14,212 bases of DNA, taken from NCBI RefSeq assembly GCF_006345805.1, contig NW_021825813.1, forward strand, positions 1-14,212. Reading direction: 5' to 3'. Both the position numbers and the translations under genes were made by a program. The notes under the pieces are model-generated. The model did no database searches and was not told the origin of the DNA. It saw only the letters and a program-made list of their open reading frames with translations. This DNA is from Octopus sinensis. Its lineage: Eukaryota. Below, piece after piece: positions 1,740-14,152 of this stretch (positions within the stretch are counted from its first letter, which is position 1; each line of letters starts with the position of its first letter).

Positions 1740-2305
1740 CCTATTCTTTCTACTCTATGCATAAGGCCCGAAATTTGGGGGTGGGGGCAGTCGATTAGAT
1801 CGACCCCTGTATGCAACTAATACTTAGTTTATCAACCCTGAAAGGATAAAAGGCAAAGTCGACCTAGGCGGAATTTGAACTCAGAACGTAAAGACAGACG
1901 AAATACAAGGGGCTAAACATAGAGAGGACAAACAAGGACAGACAAACAGATTAAGTCGATTATATCGTCTCCAGTGCGTAACTAGTACTTATTTAATCGA
2001 CCCCGAAAGGATGAAAGGCAAAGTTGACTTCGGCAGAATTTGAACTCAGAACGTAAAAGCAGACGAAATACCTATTTCTTTACAACCCACTAGAGGCTAA
2101 ACACAGAGAGGACAAAAAAGGACAGACAAACGGATTAAGTCGATTATATCGACCCCAGGGCGTAACTGGTACTTATTTAATCGACCCCGAAAGGATGAAA
2201 GGCAAAGTTGACCTCGGCGAAATTTGAACTCAGAACGTAGCGACAGACGAAATACCGCTAAGCATTTCGCCCAGCGTGCTAACGTTTCTGCCAGTTCGCC
2301 GCCTT
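1740..2305 (-). mobile_element. Head-to-tail trimer of family-1 SINE (one full head plus two 5'-truncated copies)
   Basis: The core GTCGATTA..CGACCCC..GGCAAAGTCGACCTCGGCGGAATTTGAACTCAGAACGT occurs three times (about 1740-1906, 1906-2071, 2072-2305). Only the rightmost copy has the A-box head; the leftmost has a different 3' tail. Confidence 0.93.
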
Positions 2306-2635: not shown

Positions 2636-2805
2636 ATATATATATGTGTGTGTATTTTTAATGTGTACAAATAACACGGAAAAAACAAATAAATAGTTAA
2701 CAGGTAGCAAAAAATTCACATAAGTACCAAGGATATAACAGCCCACTTAAAAGGTAGAAATTGCAGGGTTTAGTGAAATGTTTTTGCGTAACAGATTAAT
2801 AAAGA

Positions 2806-3577
2806 AATGTAGCTAAACGCAGGTGCTATTCAAATCTTTATACTTCCGACATATGTTTCGAAGAAAACATTGGTATTATTCCAGAAGGAATAAATAAAAT
2901 GATGTAAAACAATGCGATCTTCGCATCAGGAAAAAAAAAGAGAAACAAAACACATCAATAAGCCGTTTTAACCGAATGTGATGACTGTGTATTTAAAAAA
3001 AAACAACCGTTAATATATTTAACTTCAAATGCAATTTAGAGAAAAGGAAAGAAAGAAAGAAATTAGCAGAAAACCAAGAATGGAGAAATGTAGTGCAATA
3101 GATGAATGGGAATAAAGCTTAAAGGCGTGGGAATGGATATATTTAGTAGAAATGAAATGTAAGAAGATAGTTAAAGGTTGAATTTTATAGATTGCTAGAA
3201 ATTACTTATAGGAACTAAAGGTATGTTTTTTGCCAATGTTTACAACGAAAAACGCGTTCTTTAAACGTGTTTACAAGAGAATTCTCTGAGAACAGGATGA
3301 GATATAGTTCATCGTTACATAGCGGACAAGAGGATTTACCTTTATCATATGGGAAGGACCTATATTGCATTTGACATTAAATCTATTAATGGTTTTTCTT
3401 TTTTGAATAACCTGCCAGCGTTCCCTTCATCAGATACAAAGTCATCACATTCGGATAGAATGGCTTATTGATGTATTTTGTTTCTCTTTTCTTCTCTGAT
3501 GAAATAATACCAATGTTTTCTTCGCAACATGTGTCGGAAGTATAAAGATTTGAATAACACTTGCGTTTAACTCCATT
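2806..3577. mobile_element. Fold-back element: ~220-230-bp inverted arms (2806-3038 / 3361-3577), ~320-bp spacer
   Basis: Left TATTCAAATCTTTATACTTCCGACATATGTTTCGAAGAAAACATTGGTATTATT matches the reverse complement of 3503-3556. The left arm has a ~43-bp extra block and the right a ~27-bp extra block. Confidence 0.88.
3491..3540 (+). ncRNA. Damaged type-I hammerhead-like motif in right fold-back arm
   Basis: CUUCU-CUGAUGA-(21 nt, weak stem II)-GCAA-CAUGUG-UC-GGAAG; stem I is CUUCU/GGAAG. GAAA is mutated to GCAA here but intact, with palindromic CAUAUG and GUC, in the left arm (2843-2859, - strand). Confidence 0.5.
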
Positions 3578-3671
3578 ACTTAATTTATTTATTTACCTAT
3601 ATACTTGCGAGCCTCCTGTCCTTCGACCCGGTCTGTATGATGTTGAAATGTATTCATAAGGCACATATTAA

Positions 3672-3741
3672 CAGTACGTAAAGAGCCAGGTGGAATGAAG
3701 CATTTTGTTTGACACCCTGACGATTTTGCCAGCTTGCGACC

Positions 3742-3742
<1 letters not shown>
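3672..3742 (-). mobile_element. Degenerate family-1-like SINE head fragment
   Basis: Minus strand GGTCGCAAGCTGGCAAAATCGTCAG..CAAAATGCTT..TCTTTACGTACTG aligns loosely with the SINE head at 2305-2230. Confidence 0.6.
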
Positions 3743-3772
<30 letters not shown>

Positions 3773-3833
3773 TATAAATATAGATATAGATATATATATG
3801 CGTGGTGTGTGTATGTGTGTGTGTATATATATG

Positions 3834-3866
<33 letters not shown>

Positions 3867-3900
3867 ATATATATATATAATATATATATTGGGCATATAT
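3743..3900. repeat. (TA)n/(TG)n/(TATG)n compound microsatellite
   Basis: Direct reading. Confidence 0.95.
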
Positions 3901-3910
3901 CTACATACAT

Positions 3911-4093
3911 ATCACGTGATCACGTGACCGACCAGACCATCAGATGTTGCTACACATCGCTGGTCACAATGCGTTCGCATTGTTTTAGCCTTCGAATGAC
4001 GCCACCCCGCTGGCTAAGCGAGCAGGCCAACAGAAGAAACCGCGATCTTTGACTGCGAGTTCGCTGCCCTAACCAGTAGGCCATTGCGCCTCC
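3911..4093 (-). mobile_element. tRNA-derived SINE (family 2), apparently internally deleted
   Basis: Minus-strand head GGAGGCGCAATGGCCTACTGGTTAGGGCAGCGAACTCGCAGTCAAAGATCGCGGTTTC is tRNA-like with an A-box. The B-box is cut short at ~4036. The tail ends in repeated palindromic TCACGTGA. Confidence 0.8.
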
Positions 4094-5574: not shown

Positions 5575-5622
5575 AGCGGTGGAGGGAAACAAACACAGAT
5601 ATAGAGACACACATAAATATAT

Positions 5623-5659
<37 letters not shown>

Positions 5660-5825
5660 CGTGGGCTTCTTTCGGTTTCCGTCTACTAAATCCCCCACAA
5701 CGATTTGGTTGGCCCGAGGCTATAGTAGAAGACATTTGCTCAAGGTTTCACGCAATGGGACTGAACCCAGAAACATGCTATGGCTGCGAAGCAAACTTCT
5801 ACCACACAGCCACGCCTGCGCTCCT
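5575..5825 (-). mobile_element. tRNA-derived SINE (family 3), head plus internal microsatellite, 3'-truncated
   Basis: Minus strand has A-box TGGCTGTGTGG and B-box GGGTTCAGTCCC, then ACCTTGAGCAAATGTCTTCTACTATAGCCTCGGG; homologous to 10986-11126. Confidence 0.85.
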
Positions 5826-5829
5826 ATCT

Positions 5830-5913
5830 CTCTATGTGTGTGTGTGTGAGTGTATATATAATATATATTATATATATATATTCATATATATATATACATA
5901 CACATATTATAGA

Positions 5914-6331: not shown

Positions 6332-6477
6332 GTAAGTTAGTGAAAGATGGTGACAGAAGTATGGAATCAGTGTCAGACATTTATAATGACCACCAATATA
6401 GTTATTCATTGTGGCTTTGTCCATTAACTGTAACAAGCATTTAAAAGCTAATACTGATATGTTGCTATTCCAAATAC

Positions 6478-6501
6478 TGATTACTATTATTATTATTATC
6501 G

Positions 6502-6562
<61 letters not shown>

Positions 6563-6606
6563 CATTATTATGATTGTTATTATTATTATTATTATTATTA
6601 TTGTTG

Positions 6607-6661
<55 letters not shown>

Positions 6662-6708
6662 CATCATTATTATGATTGTTATTATTATTATTATTATTAT
6701 TATTGTTG

Positions 6709-6747
<39 letters not shown>

Positions 6748-6770
6748 GTGTTGCTCTTATTGTTATTACA
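6478..6770. repeat. (ATT)n microsatellite with GTT/ATC interruptions and a 102-bp higher-order duplication
   Basis: The interruption block ATCATTATTATGATTGTT starts at 6561 and 6663; GTTGTTGTT starts at 6603 and 6705. Confidence 0.95.
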
Positions 6771-6839
6771 CTGGTAAAAGACAAAATGGAAGACGATTAA
6801 ACATGGAGGCGAAAGAGTGACATTAACTGGGGGAGAGAA

Positions 6840-9527: not shown

Positions 9528-10068
9528 ATACATAAAATTAAAATTAAAAGATTCAAAAGTCATATTATGTAAAGCCGAAGAAAACCTTATATTAAAAATT
9601 AACTTTAGTTAGAAGGAAAACATGTATAACCAGAGTAAATTAATTAATGATCCTATAAATTTAATTAAAATAAATGCAAGTTTGTTTATGATAAAATATT
9701 CACTTACAGAGATTTAACAGCATAAAAATATAAATACCCGTTAGTCACATACAAACATATACAAACATTCACTTATACATACACACACTAAAAACATATA
9801 CATACACGTATGCACTAAACATACAAACGTTGGCACAGCATACATACATATATACAGACATATACACAAATACATATATTTATATATATATATTATTATA
9901 TATAATATATATATATATATAATATATATATATATTATATATTATATAGAGGGCACTACTACACATAGATGCCACACGCTAGGAGGGACTTTTAAAGTCA
10001 AAACTACCAAACTAAACAAATTGTACCGAATGTAATCTTCGAAGCGAGTCATTTAAAAACAGAATTTA

Positions 10069-10132
10069 GTTACATATCACCTGTGATTTCGCAATCAATG
10101 CAGTATATGCATTTTATGTTCATCAGTGTAAC
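10069..10132 (-). ncRNA. Type-I hammerhead ribozyme, complete core
   Basis: GUUACA-CUGAUGA-ACAUAAAAUGCA-UAUAC-UGCAUUGAUUGC-GAAA-UCAC-AG-GUGA-UA-UGUAAC: perfect 6-bp stem I, stem II with a 6-bp upper helix, near-palindromic stem III, AUA triplet; predicted cut between 10075 and 10074. Confidence 0.85.
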
Positions 10133-10643
10133 GAACTCAAGATAAATATGAATGAACAAACACAACATACCAGACGAGCAACCGTAGTGTCCATCGCAGC
10201 ATATATGAATGTACATCCCTATATATCTATGTAAATGGCGCGCTTTTCGAATTGCATTTCGGTAACAACGTGCTTACTCGGAACAAAAATTCTGTAATGA
10301 ACTGTTCCGGTGAAAAATATAAATTTAAAAATAGGATAAAATCTTCATAAGAAATTATCAAGTAGTTAGTGTGAAAAAACCTCGTAAGAGAAAAAATTCG
10401 CAAATTTTTTCCACTTAAAATATTTATTTATATGAAGATTTTATCCTATTTTTAAATTTATATTTTTCACCGAACAGTTCAATACTGAATTTTTGTTCCG
10501 AGTAAGCACGTTGTTACCGAAATGCATTCGAAAAGCGCGCCATTTACATAATATATAGGATGTACATTCATATATGCTGGCGATGGACACTACGTTGCTC
10601 GTCTGGTATGTTGTGGTTGTTCATTCATATTTATCTTGAGTTC

Positions 10644-10708
10644 GTTACACTGATGAACATAAAATGCATATACTGCATTGATTGGCAAAATCACAGGTGA
10701 TATGTAAC
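10644..10708 (+). ncRNA. Mutated second copy of the element A hammerhead
   Basis: Same sequence except UUGC-GAAA reads UUGGC-AAAA, removing catalytic G12. Confidence 0.75.
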
Positions 10709-10943
10709 TAAATTCTGTTTTTAATGACTCGCTTCGAAGATTGCATTCGGTACAATTTGTTTATTTTGGTAGTTTTGACTTTAAAAGTCCCTCCTAGCGT
10801 GTGGTATCTATGTGTAATAGTGCCCTTTATATAATATAAATAAATATTTAAGAGTGGAAAAAAATTTGCGAATTTTTCTCTTACGAAGTTTTTTTCACGC
10901 TAACTACTTGATAATTTCTTATGAAGATTTTATCCTATTTTTA

Positions 10944-10985
<42 letters not shown>

Positions 10986-10989
<4 letters not shown>

Positions 10990-11126
10990 GACGGGATTCT
11001 TTCAGTTACCAAATCCATTCACAAGGCTTAGGCGACCCGAGACTATAGTAGAAGACACTTGCCCAAAGTGTCCGCCAGTGGGACTGAACCCGGAACCATG
11101 GTTTTGGTAAGCAAGCTACGTACCAC
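10986..11126 (-). mobile_element. Family-3 SINE head, 5' end clipped
   Basis: Minus strand GTGGTACGTAGCTTGCTTACC..CATGGTTCCGGGTTCAGTCCCACTG..TTTGGGCAAGTGTCTTCTACTATAG; homologous to 5657-5825. Confidence 0.85.
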
Positions 11127-11441
11127 TTAAAACATACATATATAATAGTAACACACATTTATACATGCATACAAATATACAATATACAAATAAACAATAC
11201 GCATATATAATAATATATATTACATATATAATATGTATAAGCATAAACGTACGTATATACATGATATCGTGTATACGCATACAAATATACTTATGTATTA
11301 AACAGTATTTTCCTTTGATGTATTGAATATTAAAAATGAGAAAATAGCGCAATAAATTAATGTGATATAATTTAGTGTAGCATAAATATGAAAATATAAA
11401 TTTAAAATATAAATTTGAAAATGAGTAAAATTTTTTTTAAT

Positions 11442-11535
11442 TTGACCTCGGCGAAATTTAAATCGGAAATTTAGCAACTGGCTAAATATCGCCAAATATT
11501 TTGCTCAGCTCGCTAAAGCTCTGCAACATCACCTT
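11442..11535 (-). mobile_element. Highly decayed family-1 SINE head fragment
   Basis: TTGACCTCGGCGAAATTT is identical to 2208-2225; weaker similarity beyond that. Confidence 0.55.
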
Positions 11536-12138: not shown

Positions 12139-12158
12139 ATGTGATCGTTGCATTGACC

Positions 12159-12584
12159 ATGACAGAGAAAATTGCCATGGCGATACCTGCTCAGAGGCCT
12201 ACACAATGTTGCAGAAAGTGTATGGAGAGGAATAAATGAGCCTCGCACAAGTGTACGAGTGGCTGAGACGTTTCCAAGATGGCCGAAACAATGTCGATAT
12301 TGGCGATCGTTGTGGGAGATCCGCAACAAGCAGGACTAAGAAAAGCATCGCAGATGTACCTGCAGCTATGAGGGGAAATCGTCGAATCACCATCCGTGAG
12401 TTATCAGAGGATGTGCAGATTAGTTACGGTTCAGTTCAGCCCATTATCACTGAAGATTTGGATATGAGACGTGTGTCTACCTAGTTTGTGCCAAAATTAG
12501 TTTCAGCTGACCAAATGGGCACTAGGGTTTCAGTTTCACATGATCTCTTTGATTGTGTCAAGAACAATGAAAACTTTTTGGAAA
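12159..12584 (+). pseudogene. Tc1/mariner transposase N-terminal (HTH DNA-binding) relic
   Basis: The frame reads GDTCSEAYTMLQKVYGEE*MSLAQVYEWLRRFQDGRNNVDIGDRCGRSATS..RRITIRELSEDVQISYGSVQPIITEDLDMRRVST*FVPKLVSADQMGTRVSVSHDLFDCVKNNENFL. This matches mariner motifs (xGRP, RRxTxRE, WVP-equivalent FVPK linker). It has two stops and a frameshift and ends before the catalytic DETW motif. Confidence 0.93.
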
Positions 12585-12587
12585 TTC

Positions 12588-12740
12588 TGCGTAGGCCTCT
12601 GAGCAGGTATCGCCAAGGTTTTCTGCGCAACTCTTTGTCATAGTCAATGCGACGATCACACGCTACACACTTGCTTCGAAGCACTTCTGTAACCAGTGGG
12701 AGTGAGCTAGAACGTTAAAACTTAGTGCGCATGCACTAAA
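12588..12740 (-). mobile_element. Inverted duplicate of the mariner 5' UTR and first codons
   Basis: Its reverse complement AGCGTGTGATCGTCGCATTGACTATGAC..TGGCGATACCTGCTCAGAGGCCTAC matches 12136-12202; it ends in the hairpin TTAGTGC-GCAT-GCACTAA (12722-12739). Confidence 0.88.
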
Positions 12741-12863: not shown

Positions 12864-13534
12864 CTACTAATATAGATGAAGTTCTTTACAGAAAAAAATC
12901 CATCAAAAAATGTGGCAGCATATTAAAATACCTTTAAATTATAAACAACTTATAATAAGGGCTAAAGAAAATTATTTCAATACCAATATGCTGATAACAG
13001 GCTTTTAAATCGTCAATTTCCACATATTATTTACTCGCTACAGAAAAAAACACGACGTGCAGAAATCGGGGAAAGCCGGCCGATAGAATTTTTTTTAAAG
13101 TTCGTTATTTCTATAGTGAATCAATTTCAGAATTAATCTCATAATAGATTTTTTTTCCTCTTCAGTAGAACATACGAAAGGATATAAATAAGATACTTAC
13201 ATGCGCCCATGGAAAAAAACCGAAGCAAAAATCATGAGTACATATAAGTACCCCAGATATATCTAAAAATATATCTAAAACGTGTTGACTGTTCTCCACT
13301 ACAGGTTATAGTGGTTACCAGTCCCTATAGCGAGTAGTAATAAGTCTTCTACTAATATAGGATGACGTTCTTTTACAGAAAAAAATTCCTTCAGAAAATG
13401 TGGCAGCATATTAAAATACCTTTACGGTTAAAATTATAAACAACTTATAAATAAGGGCTAAAGAAAATTATTTCAATGCCAATATGCTGATAACAGACTT
13501 TTAAATCGTCAATTTCCACAAATTATTTACTCGC

Positions 13535-13538
<4 letters not shown>
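12864..13538 (-). mobile_element. Retrozyme-like element B: ~1.4 tandem copies of a 485-bp hammerhead-containing unit, embedded in (TA)n
   Basis: Direct repeat 12864-13042 / 13349-13538 (6 substitutions, four 1-bp indels, one 7-bp indel), period 485, (TA)n on both flanks, HHR in the unique middle segment. Confidence 0.83.
13109..13170 (-). ncRNA. Type-I hammerhead ribozyme, complete core
   Basis: UUCUA-CUGAAGA-GGAAAAAAAAUCU-AUUAUG-AGAUUAAUUCU-GAAA-UUG-AUU-CAC-UA-UAGAA: 5-bp stem I, stem II with an internal loop and AAUCU/AGAUU helix, stem III with one U.C mismatch, CUA triplet; predicted cut between 13114 and 13113. Confidence 0.75.
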
Positions 13539-13568
<30 letters not shown>

Positions 13569-13622
13569 CATACGCACACATATACGGTCCTATAACGTCA
13601 CACGCAGGGAACACAAGATATA

Positions 13623-13656
<34 letters not shown>

Positions 13657-13815
13657 CATACATACATACACACACATATATACACACATACATATGTATA
13701 TATACATATATATATATCTATATATATACATATATATATACGCACACACACACAAATATACATACATATATATATATATATATATTATATATACACGTAC
13801 ACACATATGTATGTA
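13539..13815. repeat. (TA)n/(TACA)n/(CA)n compound microsatellite
   Basis: Direct reading. Confidence 0.93.
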
Positions 13816-14152
13816 TGTCTTGAAACATTGAAATTTTATTCTCTCCTGCGTTGCATCATTTGCACAATGTGGAGGTCATACCACCAGCATTGCCCAAACG
13901 ACCTTATCAAATGCAGATTTCATACGTATCCTACACAATTCAAGGTCACAATACATAAATACACTGCGGCACAATTTCTTTTCCTCAACAACCCCGATCT
14001 ATTTAATAATATCCCAAAACAAACCATGTATTTCAAATAATAGAATTCAATTTGAGGAATGATTTGGTTGTTATTTTTAGTAGGTAGAGTGATTCTGATT
14101 GGCAGGGTAGAAGGAAGGGTGATTAGCAGGATGGGGCGATTGAGAGATGGAA

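What the first reader, a model, noticed from the sequence alone, without database searches (positions are those of the whole stretch)
10069..10132. Canonical type-I hammerhead in element A
Seen: all core residues (CUGAUGA, GAAA, A15.1-U16.1, H17=A) sit in the correct topology, closed by a perfect GUUACA/UGUAAC stem I. Stem III AUCAC-AG-GUGAU is self-complementary apart from a central tandem A.G pair. Established: short palindromic stem III HHRs typically work as dimers. The base of stem II is A.C rather than the usual G-C, so the rate is uncertain.
Basis: partly seen in the sequence, partly recalled or inferred. Interest (0 to 1): 0.88.

Follow-up and report, generated by a model that had tools for sequence, protein, structure and literature searches.

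The report
Atypical hammerhead motif in retroelement-like repeat
The hammerhead-ribozyme-like sequence is really there, inside a ~490-base repeat inserted in a way typical of Penelope-like retroelements, but it is not a canonical hammerhead, its twin copy is broken, and such ribozyme-bearing repeats are already well known in animal genomes.

Summary
The motif exists exactly as described on the minus strand, 10132->10069. It has a 6-bp helix I, the CUGAUGA and GAAA boxes, the A15.1-U16.1 pair and A17, with the predicted cut between 10075 and 10074.

"Canonical" is not supported:
- No Rfam hammerhead model matches, even at E<=10.
- The G10.1-C11.1 pair is replaced by A.C.
- Helix II is 2 bp, then a 3x3 internal loop, then 6 bp.
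- The hammerhead fold is about 3.7 kcal/mol worse than the best fold, which buries both boxes in other hairpins.
- The only other copy (10644-10708, + strand) has the catalytic G12 changed to A.

The bare motif is rare per window (3e-5 to 7e-4). Across a genome of gigabase size, 6-120 chance instances are expected.

What favours a real hammerhead lineage is the context. The motif lies in a ~491-nt non-coding unit. Two arrays of slightly more than one unit lie head-to-head, with the truncation at the centre, inside a (TA)n microsatellite. This is the published insertion anatomy of Penelope-like elements and their non-autonomous retrozymes, and it agrees with the ribozyme's polarity.

Best reading: a weak or decayed hammerhead variant in such a repeat. 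This is a new member of a known kind, of modest interest. No other copies could be retrieved, so family conservation is untested.

The parts
10069..10132 (-). Type-I hammerhead-like motif, copy A, with a complete catalytic core. Helix I 10132-10127 / 10074-10069; CUGAUGA 10126-10120; helix II region 10119-10091; GAAA 10090-10087; helix III 10087-10076; A17 10075. Predicted cut between 10075 and 10074.
   Evidence: Sequence read; own descriptor scan; shuffles and random-sequence rates; no Rfam hammerhead match; folding.
10644..10708 (+). Inverted copy B of the motif, with a broken core: G12->A at 10687 (GCGAAA becomes GCAAAA, a CpG->CpA change) and an extra G at 10684 in the 3' strand of helix II.
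   Evidence: Alignment of the two arms; list of differences. G12 is a catalytic residue with no high-activity mutants (PMC9901934).
9938..10432 (-). Minus-strand array. A 15-nt tail of a preceding unit (10432-10417) is followed by one full unit A (10416->~9938, ~479 nt of a ~491-nt unit). Its 3' end runs into (TA)n.
   Evidence: Self-BLAST; alignments; sequence. The circular fold of this 491 nt has z=-3.5 against shuffles.
10431..10849 (+). Unit B: a 5'-truncated copy, starting at about unit position 82, head-to-head with A and 95.7% identical to A over 415 aligned columns.
10850..10950 (+). Unit C: the first ~100 nt of a further unit in tandem after B. Its similarity ends in (TA)n.
   Evidence: Self-BLAST: 10834-10953 against 10433-10317, 93%; alignment; sequence.
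9862..9937 (.). Left flank: TA-rich microsatellite, read as half of the insertion target.
   Evidence: Sequence; repeat families.
10951..11115 (.). Right flank: (TA)n followed by a SINE-like repeat. In another copy of this repeat (5627-5777) the internal (TA)n is uninterrupted.
   Evidence: Right flank 78% identical to 5627-5777, E=1e-31; sequences.

Best explanation
The site is a hammerhead-ribozyme-derived motif (type I topology). It is carried by a ~491-nt non-coding repeat of the kind mobilised by Penelope-like retroelements, that is, a pLTR-like or non-LTR-retrozyme-like non-autonomous element.

Shown:
- The full catalytic core, helix I and helix III are present in copy A.
- The repeat is present as two arrays of slightly more than unit length. 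They lie head-to-head with the truncated end at the centre, inside a (TA)n microsatellite.
- The ribozyme's polarity is the polarity that puts both 5' ends at the centre and both 3' ends outward.

Inferred mechanism:
- In transcripts of the ribozyme polarity the three helices form around the core, transiently or by pairing of the near-palindromic helix III of two copies.
- G12 acts as general base, and the 2'-OH of A17 (10075) attacks the next phosphate. This leaves a 2',3'-cyclic phosphate on A17 and a 5'-OH on U (10074).
- In tandem or multimeric transcripts this releases unit-length RNA. A tRNA ligase can circularise that RNA, and a Penelope-type reverse transcriptase can copy it for more than one unit length at a nick in (TA)n.

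Because of the A.C at 10.1-11.1, the interrupted helix II and the competing local hairpins, cleavage by this particular sequence is expected to be weak or absent. This locus has only one intact copy, and its partner is an antisense copy with G12A. It is most likely a dead insertion rather than a working ribozyme gene.
For: - Motif: confirmed and unique in the window. Its chance rate per window is 3e-5 to 7e-4.
- Arrays: the unit is arranged as a minus-strand array (10432->9938) and a plus-strand array (10431->10950). Each is about 1.0-1.06 units long and they are permuted differently.
- Target: both arrays end in (TA)n. The right-hand (TA)n is the internal microsatellite of a SINE-like repeat that is uninterrupted in another copy.
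- Published Penelope-like anatomy: partial tandems plus an adjacent inverted 5'-truncated copy, with insertion bias for (TA)n (PMC8557442).
- Published Penelope-like motifs: long helix II, palindromic helix III, and pairs of motifs 100-700 bp apart on opposite strands (PMC4209133). Here the two motifs are 511 nt apart on opposite strands.
- Mismatch precedent: a natural hammerhead with a mismatch (U.U) at the base of helix II still cleaves, and cleaves better as a dimer (axolotl HHR_Amex2, PMC7229834).
- Self-pairing: the unit RNA in the ribozyme polarity is more self-paired than shuffles (circular MFE -113.9 kcal/mol, z=-3.5, against -95.1, z=-2.7, for the other polarity). This is as described for retrozyme circles.
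- Ancestral state: the G12->A difference in copy B lies at a CpG, so copy A probably keeps the ancestral state.
Against: - No Rfam hammerhead family matches, even at E<=10 on 121 nt.
- G10.1-C11.1 is described as highly conserved even in minimal Penelope-like motifs (PMC4209133). It is absent here, and both copies share A10.1. [quoted passage not shown]
- Helix II has only 2 pairs before a 3x3 internal loop.
- The hammerhead fold is -8.4 against -12.1 kcal/mol for the best fold. In the ensemble helix I has about 7% probability and helix III under 1%. z-scores of the local fold are insignificant.
- Both conserved boxes are sequestered in alternative hairpins (GUUCGUUA/UGAUGAAC and GAUU/AAUC).
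- The motif is no better conserved between the two copies than the rest of the unit: 2 differences in 64 nt against 16 in 351.
- No reverse transcriptase or GIY-YIG reading frame was seen among the listed ORFs.
- Neither array end coincides with the predicted cleavage site.
- No further copies could be found, so there is no covariation evidence.
- Genome-wide, 6-120 chance motifs of this looseness are expected.
Confidence: 0.6

Rival explanations
1. Chance resemblance. The repeat is an ordinary satellite, foldback or inverted duplication at a microsatellite. The 64 nt merely happen to contain CUGAUGA and GAAA between complementary flanks. No ribozyme ancestry and no cleavage.
For: - 6-120 such motifs are expected by chance in a gigabase-sized genome when helix II is not required.
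- All hammerhead covariance models fail.
- G10.1-C11.1 is absent, and the hammerhead fold is thermodynamically disfavoured and not significant against shuffles.
- The second copy has a mutated core and the motif shows no excess conservation.
- A second, clearly spurious, CUGAUGA...GAAA hit exists at 3374-3437.
Against: - The per-window probability is only 3e-5 to 7e-4.
- The motif sits in the kind of element, and in the polarity, where hammerheads are known to reside. Under chance that coincidence should be rare.
- All 10 pairs of helices I and III are Watson-Crick, and all 13 conserved positions are correct.
Confidence: 0.32
2. One reading: a canonical, currently active type-I hammerhead that processes transcripts of this locus, as a monomer or as a dimer.
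For: - Complete core, perfect helix I and near-palindromic helix III.
- A natural precedent exists for activity with a mismatch at the base of helix II (PMC7229834).
Against: - Not canonical by any tested criterion.
- There is no second intact sense copy in the window for dimer formation. The partner copy is antisense and carries G12A.
- A read-through transcript covering both arms would form a hairpin of about 420 bp instead of a hammerhead.
- Even bona fide minimal Penelope-like motifs cleave poorly in vitro (PMC4209133).
Confidence: 0.15
3. A box C/D small nucleolar RNA-like gene, with a terminal stem GUUACA/UGUAAC and a C box (C)UGAUGA.
For: A weak Rfam hit to snR60/Z15 over 10067-10134 (13.7 bits against a gathering score of 41, E=7.4).
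Against: - There is no D box (CUGA) next to the 3' strand of the stem.
- The score is far below threshold.
- The sequence is part of a repeated element with a mutated twin.
Confidence: 0.01

Closest known systems
Minimal or atypical type-I hammerheads in the pseudo-LTRs of Penelope-like elements (Cervera and de la Pena 2014, PMC4209133)
   Same: - Type I topology, a long helix II and a palindromic helix III.
- Pairs of motifs a few hundred bp apart on opposite strands.
- The host element is inserted as partial tandems with an inverted 5'-truncated copy, preferentially in microsatellites.
- Low expected activity.
   Different: [quoted passage not shown]
- Helix II is interrupted by a 3x3 internal loop.
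- Helix I is a full 6 bp, and helix III is 4-5 bp rather than 0-2 bp.
- No RT/EN reading frame was found among the window's listed ORFs.
Metazoan non-LTR retrozymes: tandem 150-450-bp repeats with type-I hammerheads, expressed as circular RNAs (PMC7229834; bioRxiv 10.64898/2026.07.22.740005)
   Same: A non-coding, low-GC unit with one type-I motif per unit, head-to-tail continuation (B->C), a self-paired unit RNA, and a proposed origin from Penelope-like elements.
   Different: - The unit (~491 nt) is longer than the reported 170-400 nt.
- Only about one unit per array.
- There are not two consecutive intact motifs, which is the operational criterion for an active retrozyme.
- Expression and circularity are untested.
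Axolotl HHR_Amex2 (PMC7229834)
   Same: A mismatch at the base of helix II, a weak monomer, and possible dimeric action through helix III.
   Different: - The axolotl mismatch is U.U, here it is A.C.
- The axolotl motif keeps a short canonical helix II and loop-loop contacts.
- It is present in about 60,000 tandem copies and its cleavage was demonstrated.
pDo500 satellite of Dolichopoda cave crickets and newt satellite 2 hammerheads (PMC2837043; cited in PMC7229834)
   Same: A repeat unit of a few hundred bases (about 500 in pDo500) carrying a type-I hammerhead that works better in multimeric transcripts.
   Different: Those are long tandem satellite arrays with motif conservation and compensatory changes documented across species. 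Here there are two inverted copies, one of them broken, and no comparative data.

Membership tests
Hammerhead ribozyme (type I) | Conserved core C3-U4-G5-A6-N7-G8-A9 and G12-A13-A14 | tested here: met
   CUGAUGA at 10126-10120 and GAA at 10090-10088 in copy A. Copy B has G12->A.
Hammerhead ribozyme (type I) | A15.1-U16.1 pair and a non-G nucleotide at position 17, before the cleavage site | tested here: met
   A 10087 pairs with U 10076; A17 is at 10075.
Hammerhead ribozyme (type I) | Three helices around the core, with helix I open-ended | tested here: inconclusive
   Helix I is 6 bp and helix III 4-5 bp, all Watson-Crick. Helix II is only CA/UG, then a 3x3 internal loop, then 6 bp.
Hammerhead ribozyme (type I) | G10.1-C11.1 pair at the base of helix II | tested here: not met
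   A10.1 (10119) faces C11.1 (10091) in both copies. No alternative register gives G-C.
Hammerhead ribozyme (type I) | Match to a curated covariance model (Rfam hammerhead families) | tested here: not met
   No hammerhead hit at gathering score, at E<=10 on the window, or at E<=10 on 10040-10160.
Hammerhead ribozyme (type I) | Active fold is thermodynamically accessible or favoured | tested here: not met
   Hammerhead fold -8.4 against MFE -12.1 kcal/mol. Helix I probability is about 0.07 and helix III under 0.01. The active fold is 3.7-4.8 kcal/mol worse in longer contexts.
Hammerhead ribozyme (type I) | Conservation of the core and covariation in the helices across copies | tested here: inconclusive
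   Only two copies are available. There are 2 differences in 64 nt against 16 in 351 outside, and both differences are disruptive. No other copies were found.
Hammerhead ribozyme (type I) | Mg2+-dependent site-specific self-cleavage | not testable with these tools
   Needs in vitro transcription or RNA end mapping.
Penelope-like element insertion (pLTR-type or non-autonomous derivative) | Partial tandem copies with an adjacent inverted 5'-truncated copy | tested here: met
   Minus array 10432->9938 and plus array 10431->10950 lie head-to-head. B is truncated at the centre and B->C is a tandem continuation. Anatomy as described in PMC8557442.
Penelope-like element insertion (pLTR-type or non-autonomous derivative) | Insertion bias for microsatellites such as (TA)n | tested here: met
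   (TA)n lies on both sides. The right one belongs to a SINE-like repeat whose other copy is uninterrupted.
Penelope-like element insertion (pLTR-type or non-autonomous derivative) | RT plus GIY-YIG endonuclease reading frame | tested here: inconclusive
   No ORF above 166 aa, and nothing RT-like among the ORFs listed. If the locus is related to Penelope-like elements at all, the element would be non-autonomous.
Metazoan non-LTR retrozyme | Tandem repeat with at least two consecutive units, each holding a complete hammerhead | tested here: not met
   There is one intact motif (A). B is on the other strand with G12A, and C stops before the motif.
Metazoan non-LTR retrozyme | Small unit (about 150-450 bp), low GC, highly self-paired unit RNA | tested here: inconclusive
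   The unit is ~491 nt, slightly above the reported range. GC is 0.33. The circular MFE has z=-3.5 with 64% of bases paired.
Box C/D snoRNA | C box and D box brought together by a terminal stem | tested here: not met
   C-box-like UGAUGA and a terminal stem are present, but there is no CUGA D box next to the 3' strand. The Rfam score is 13.7 against 41.

The most novel reading that the evidence does not exclude
The ~491-nt unit is a live family of retrozyme-like circular-RNA elements in this (apparently cephalopod-like) genome. Its hammerhead works despite an A.C (possibly protonated A+.C wobble) at 10.1-11.1 and a long helix II with an internal loop. It would then be a new functional hammerhead architecture that current covariance models and descriptors miss.
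Probability: 0.15. Interest if true: 0.5.

Novelty: new member of a known kind. Interest (0 to 1): 0.25.

Why it matters
If real, this adds one more lineage, and an unusually loose helix II variant, to the very large set of hammerhead-bearing retroelement repeats of animals. It would also be an example that standard covariance models do not detect. It would not change the present picture of Penelope-like elements and retrozymes. If it is chance, it shows usefully that a complete hammerhead core with perfect helices I and III is expected several times per large AT-rich genome. Helix II, model scores and family conservation therefore have to be checked before a ribozyme is called.

Tried and rejected
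- Rfam at gathering score and at E<=10, on the window and on 121 nt: no hammerhead and no other ribozyme. Only microsatellite-driven miRNA look-alikes and a 13.7-bit snoRNA look-alike appeared.
- Family copies through spurious ORFs. The 48-aa ORF spanning the motif found nothing in the protein collection. An exact look-up of a window ORF was not on record.
- Exact-pattern scans with two conserved segments of the unit: metagenome contigs, prokaryotic genome contigs and viral contigs all gave zero hits. These collections probably do not hold the source organism.
- Relaxed scan for other CUGANGA...GAAA motifs with a helix II. One hit appeared, at 13125-13165 (-), with 4 helix II pairs; I did not examine it further. 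The hit at 3374-3437 (-) has no helix II and a 4-bp helix I with G.U, and I judge it to be chance.
- Alternative registers for helix II, including a bulged nucleotide after A9 as in Penelope-like motifs: none restores G10.1-C11.1.
Only a mariner-type remnant was confirmed separately.
- Box C/D snoRNA reading: rejected for lack of a D box.
- The 'palindromic helix III' as independent evidence: rejected. Any hairpin with a 2-nt loop is automatically near-palindromic.

Full report
**Observation.**
The minus strand from 10132 to 10069 reads GUUACA-CUGAUGA-(29 nt)-GAAA-UCACAGGUGAU-A-UGUAAC. A descriptor scan I wrote looks for helix I, CUGAUGA, 8-45 nt, GAAA, a helix III closed by A15.1-U16.1, a non-G position 17 and the helix I return strand. 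It recovers this site as the only good hit on either strand. Helix I has six Watson-Crick pairs. Helix III is AUCA/UGAU with a CAGG loop, or five pairs around an AG that is too short to be a loop. The cut would fall between 10075 and 10074.

**Chance.**
- In 3000 dinucleotide-preserving shuffles of the window, no hit reached helix I >=6 bp with helix III >=4 bp. Looser thresholds gave 0.0017 and 0.025 hits per window.
- In 4.16 Gb of random sequence of the window's composition, the rate is 3.4e-5 per window with Watson-Crick pairs only and 7e-4 with G.U allowed.
- The motif is therefore far beyond chance for one window. Scaled to a genome of 2.5 Gb, 6 to 120 such sites would arise by chance, because this descriptor asks nothing of helix II.
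- The bare motif does not prove a ribozyme. Further criteria are needed.

**Is it a canonical hammerhead? No.**
- Model matches: Rfam's covariance models give no hammerhead match at gathering score, none at E<=10 on the whole window, and none at E<=10 on 121 nt around the site, where the filters are laxest.
- The G10.1-C11.1 pair: it is described as highly conserved even in the minimal hammerheads of Penelope-like elements (PMC4209133). Here it is A.C in both copies, and no alternative register restores it.
- Helix II: two pairs (CA/UG), then a 3x3 internal loop (UAA/GAU), then a six-pair hairpin (AAUGCA/UGCAUU, loop UAUAC). Canonical metazoan type I motifs have a 4-bp helix II whose loop contacts a loop in helix I (PMC4209133).
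- Energetics: the hammerhead fold scores -8.4 kcal/mol against -12.1 for the minimum-energy fold. Helix I has about 7% probability in the ensemble and helix III under 1%. With 10-40 nt of flanks the hammerhead fold remains 3.7-4.8 kcal/mol worse.
- Competing fold: it buries the CUGAUGA box in a GUUCGUUA/UGAUGAAC hairpin and the GAAA box in a GAUU/AAUC hairpin.
- Caveat: viroid and retrozyme hammerheads are also often hidden in more stable structures, so the energetic point is weak on its own. It does remove any thermodynamic support.

**The second copy.**
The site lies in one arm of a large inverted repeat. The mirror copy at 10644-10708 on the plus strand is identical except for two changes. 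There is an extra G at 10684, and G12->A at 10687 turns GCGAAA into GCAAAA. G12 is one of the two catalytic guanosines, and no high-activity mutants of these are known (PMC9901934), so copy B is dead. The change is CpG->CpA, so copy A probably keeps the ancestral state. Over 415 aligned columns the arms differ at 18 positions: 2 in the 64 nt of the motif and 16 in the other 351. The motif is therefore no better conserved than its surroundings. Eight of the 18 differences are single-base indels, mostly in G runs, and may be assembly errors.

**What the element is.**
Self-comparison and alignments resolve a non-coding unit of about 491 nt (GC 0.33).
- On the minus strand, 15 nt of the AT-rich tail of a preceding unit (10432-10417) are followed by a full unit A (10416 to about 9938).
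- On the plus strand, a 5'-truncated unit B (10431-10849) begins at about unit position 82. It continues without a break into the first ~100 nt of another unit, C (10850 to about 10950).
- The two arrays are head-to-head. Each is a little more than one unit long, and they are circularly permuted relative to each other.
- Both outer ends run into (TA)n.
- The right-hand (TA)n continues into a SINE-like repeat that is 78% identical (E=1e-31) to another copy at 5627-5777. In that copy the internal (TA)n is uninterrupted. The left flank matches only through low-complexity sequence.
- The ~1.0-kb composite therefore looks like an insertion into a (TA)n microsatellite.

This is the published anatomy of Penelope-like element insertions: partial tandems, an inverted 5'-truncated copy next to the upstream repeat, and a bias for microsatellites, with (TA)n named for one clade (PMC8557442). 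Pairs of minimal hammerheads 100-700 bp apart on opposite strands are described for Schistosoma Penelope-like remnants (PMC4209133). Here the distance is 511 nt. The polarity of the hammerhead is the polarity in which both arrays have their truncated 5' ends at the centre and their 3' ends outward. I did not build this agreement into the search. No RT or GIY-YIG frame was seen among the ORFs of the window, so the element would be non-autonomous. That resembles the metazoan non-LTR retrozymes, which a recent preprint derives from Penelope-like pLTRs (bioRxiv 10.64898/2026.07.22.740005). The unit RNA folded as a circle is more stable than shuffles in the ribozyme polarity (-113.9 kcal/mol, z=-3.5, 64% paired) and less so in the other polarity (-95.1, z=-2.7). 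This is in line with, but not specific for, the self-paired circles described for retrozymes (PMC7229834).

**Weighing.**
- For a real hammerhead lineage: all 13 conserved positions; ten Watson-Crick pairs in helices I and III; and a host element whose architecture, target and polarity are those of known hammerhead carriers.
- Mismatch precedent: a natural motif with a U.U mismatch at the base of helix II still cleaves. It reaches 22% in an hour as a monomer and much more as a dimer (PMC7229834). The A.C is therefore not disqualifying.
- Against: failure of all curated models; absence of G10.1-C11.1; the irregular helix II; the unfavourable fold; no excess conservation; a broken twin; and array ends that do not coincide with the cleavage site.
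- No other copies could be retrieved from any collection open to me. The decisive test, conservation and covariation across the family, could not be run.
- My probabilities: 0.6 that the motif descends from a hammerhead of a Penelope-type or retrozyme-type element; about 0.32 that it is chance; about 0.15 that this very sequence is an active ribozyme at this locus.

**How it would work (inferred, not shown).**
In transcripts of the minus strand, the three helices would form around the core. G12 would deprotonate the 2'-OH of A17 (10075), which attacks the adjacent phosphate. This leaves a 2',3'-cyclic phosphate and a 5'-OH on U 10074. In multimeric transcripts this yields unit-length RNA, which an RtcB-type ligase can circularise. 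Over 80% of the axolotl retrozyme RNA and about 30% of the mussel RNA were circularised by RtcB in vitro (PMC7229834). A Penelope-type RT could then copy the circle for more than one unit at a nick in (TA)n. That would explain arrays slightly longer than a unit with different permutations. The AT-rich array ends (unit tail UAUAUAAUAUAAAUAAAUAUUU; UUUUUAAAU) suggest priming by microhomology with the (TA)n target.

At this locus a dimeric hammerhead in cis is impossible, because the only partner is antisense and mutated. A read-through transcript would fold instead into a hairpin of about 420 bp. A 4-bp helix III with a tetraloop can form in a monomer, and near-palindromy is automatic for any hairpin with a 2-nt loop.

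**Comparison and novelty.**
Closest are the atypical type-I hammerheads of Penelope-like elements and the non-LTR retrozymes. Membership in 'hammerhead ribozyme' is met for the core, the cleavage site and the topology. It is not met for G10.1-C11.1, the model match and fold preference, and it is untestable for cleavage. Membership in 'active retrozyme' (two consecutive intact motifs) is not met. Hammerheads in animal repeats are known in very large numbers. At best this is a new member of a known kind with an unusual helix II. Interest is modest (0.25).

The most novel reading not excluded is a live family whose hammerhead functions with an A.C at 10.1-11.1 and an interrupted long helix II that standard models miss (probability about 0.15).

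**Provenance.**
The SINE-like repeats and the microsatellite load resemble, from my memory only, cephalopod (octopus) genomic DNA. This is a lead, not a test, and nothing above depends on it.

Noticed in passing
window ~12150-12600 (+): Remnant of a mariner/Mos1-type transposase N-terminus. Pfam HTH_48 E=1e-6, 29.2 bits against a cutoff of 24.1. It is interrupted by stop codons and coincides with the GC-richest part of the window.
   Followed up: partly
window 1789-2256; also 739-987 and 11439-11516: A 184-bp tandem repeat with 2.7 copies at 79-91% identity. Related SINE-like pieces occur elsewhere in the window. It holds no CUGAUGA box, so it is not a hammerhead carrier.
   Followed up: partly
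window 5627-5790 and 10988-11115: Two copies (78% alike) of a SINE-like repeat with an internal (TA)n microsatellite. The second is the right flank of the element studied.
   Followed up: yes
window 2790-2883 / 3500-3593, and 3374-3437 (-): Inverted repeat with 94-nt arms (87% complementary) enclosing 616 nt, which looks like a MITE or foldback element. Inside it is a weak CUGAUGA...GAAA hit with a 4-bp helix I (G.U included) and no helix II, judged to be chance.
   Followed up: partly
window 12864-13042 and 13349-13538: A segment of about 185 nt is duplicated at 91% identity. Each copy abuts a (TA)n tract. It is unrelated to the 491-nt unit.
   Followed up: partly
window 9938-10850: Eight of the 18 differences between the two arms are single-base indels, mostly in G runs. 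This pattern suggests assembly or sequencing errors rather than mutations.
   Followed up: no
window 3730-3920, 5600-5910, 13520-13820 and others: Sub-threshold Rfam 'mir-297', 'mir-3149' and 'mir-1277' matches (up to 45 bits against gathering scores of 81-100) all fall on TA/TG/CA microsatellites. They are low-complexity artefacts.
   Followed up: yes
window 6408-6824; 2305-2638: A long trinucleotide-type array, reported with spacings of 9-15 nt, in a stretch of 21% GC at 6408-6824. A nested palindrome at 2305-2638, with arms of 81-86 nt at 74-84% complementarity.
   Followed up: no
window 13125-13165 (-): The relaxed scan returned one CUGAAGA...GAAA pair here with a 4-bp helix II. Helices I and III were not checked, so its status is open.
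   Followed up: no
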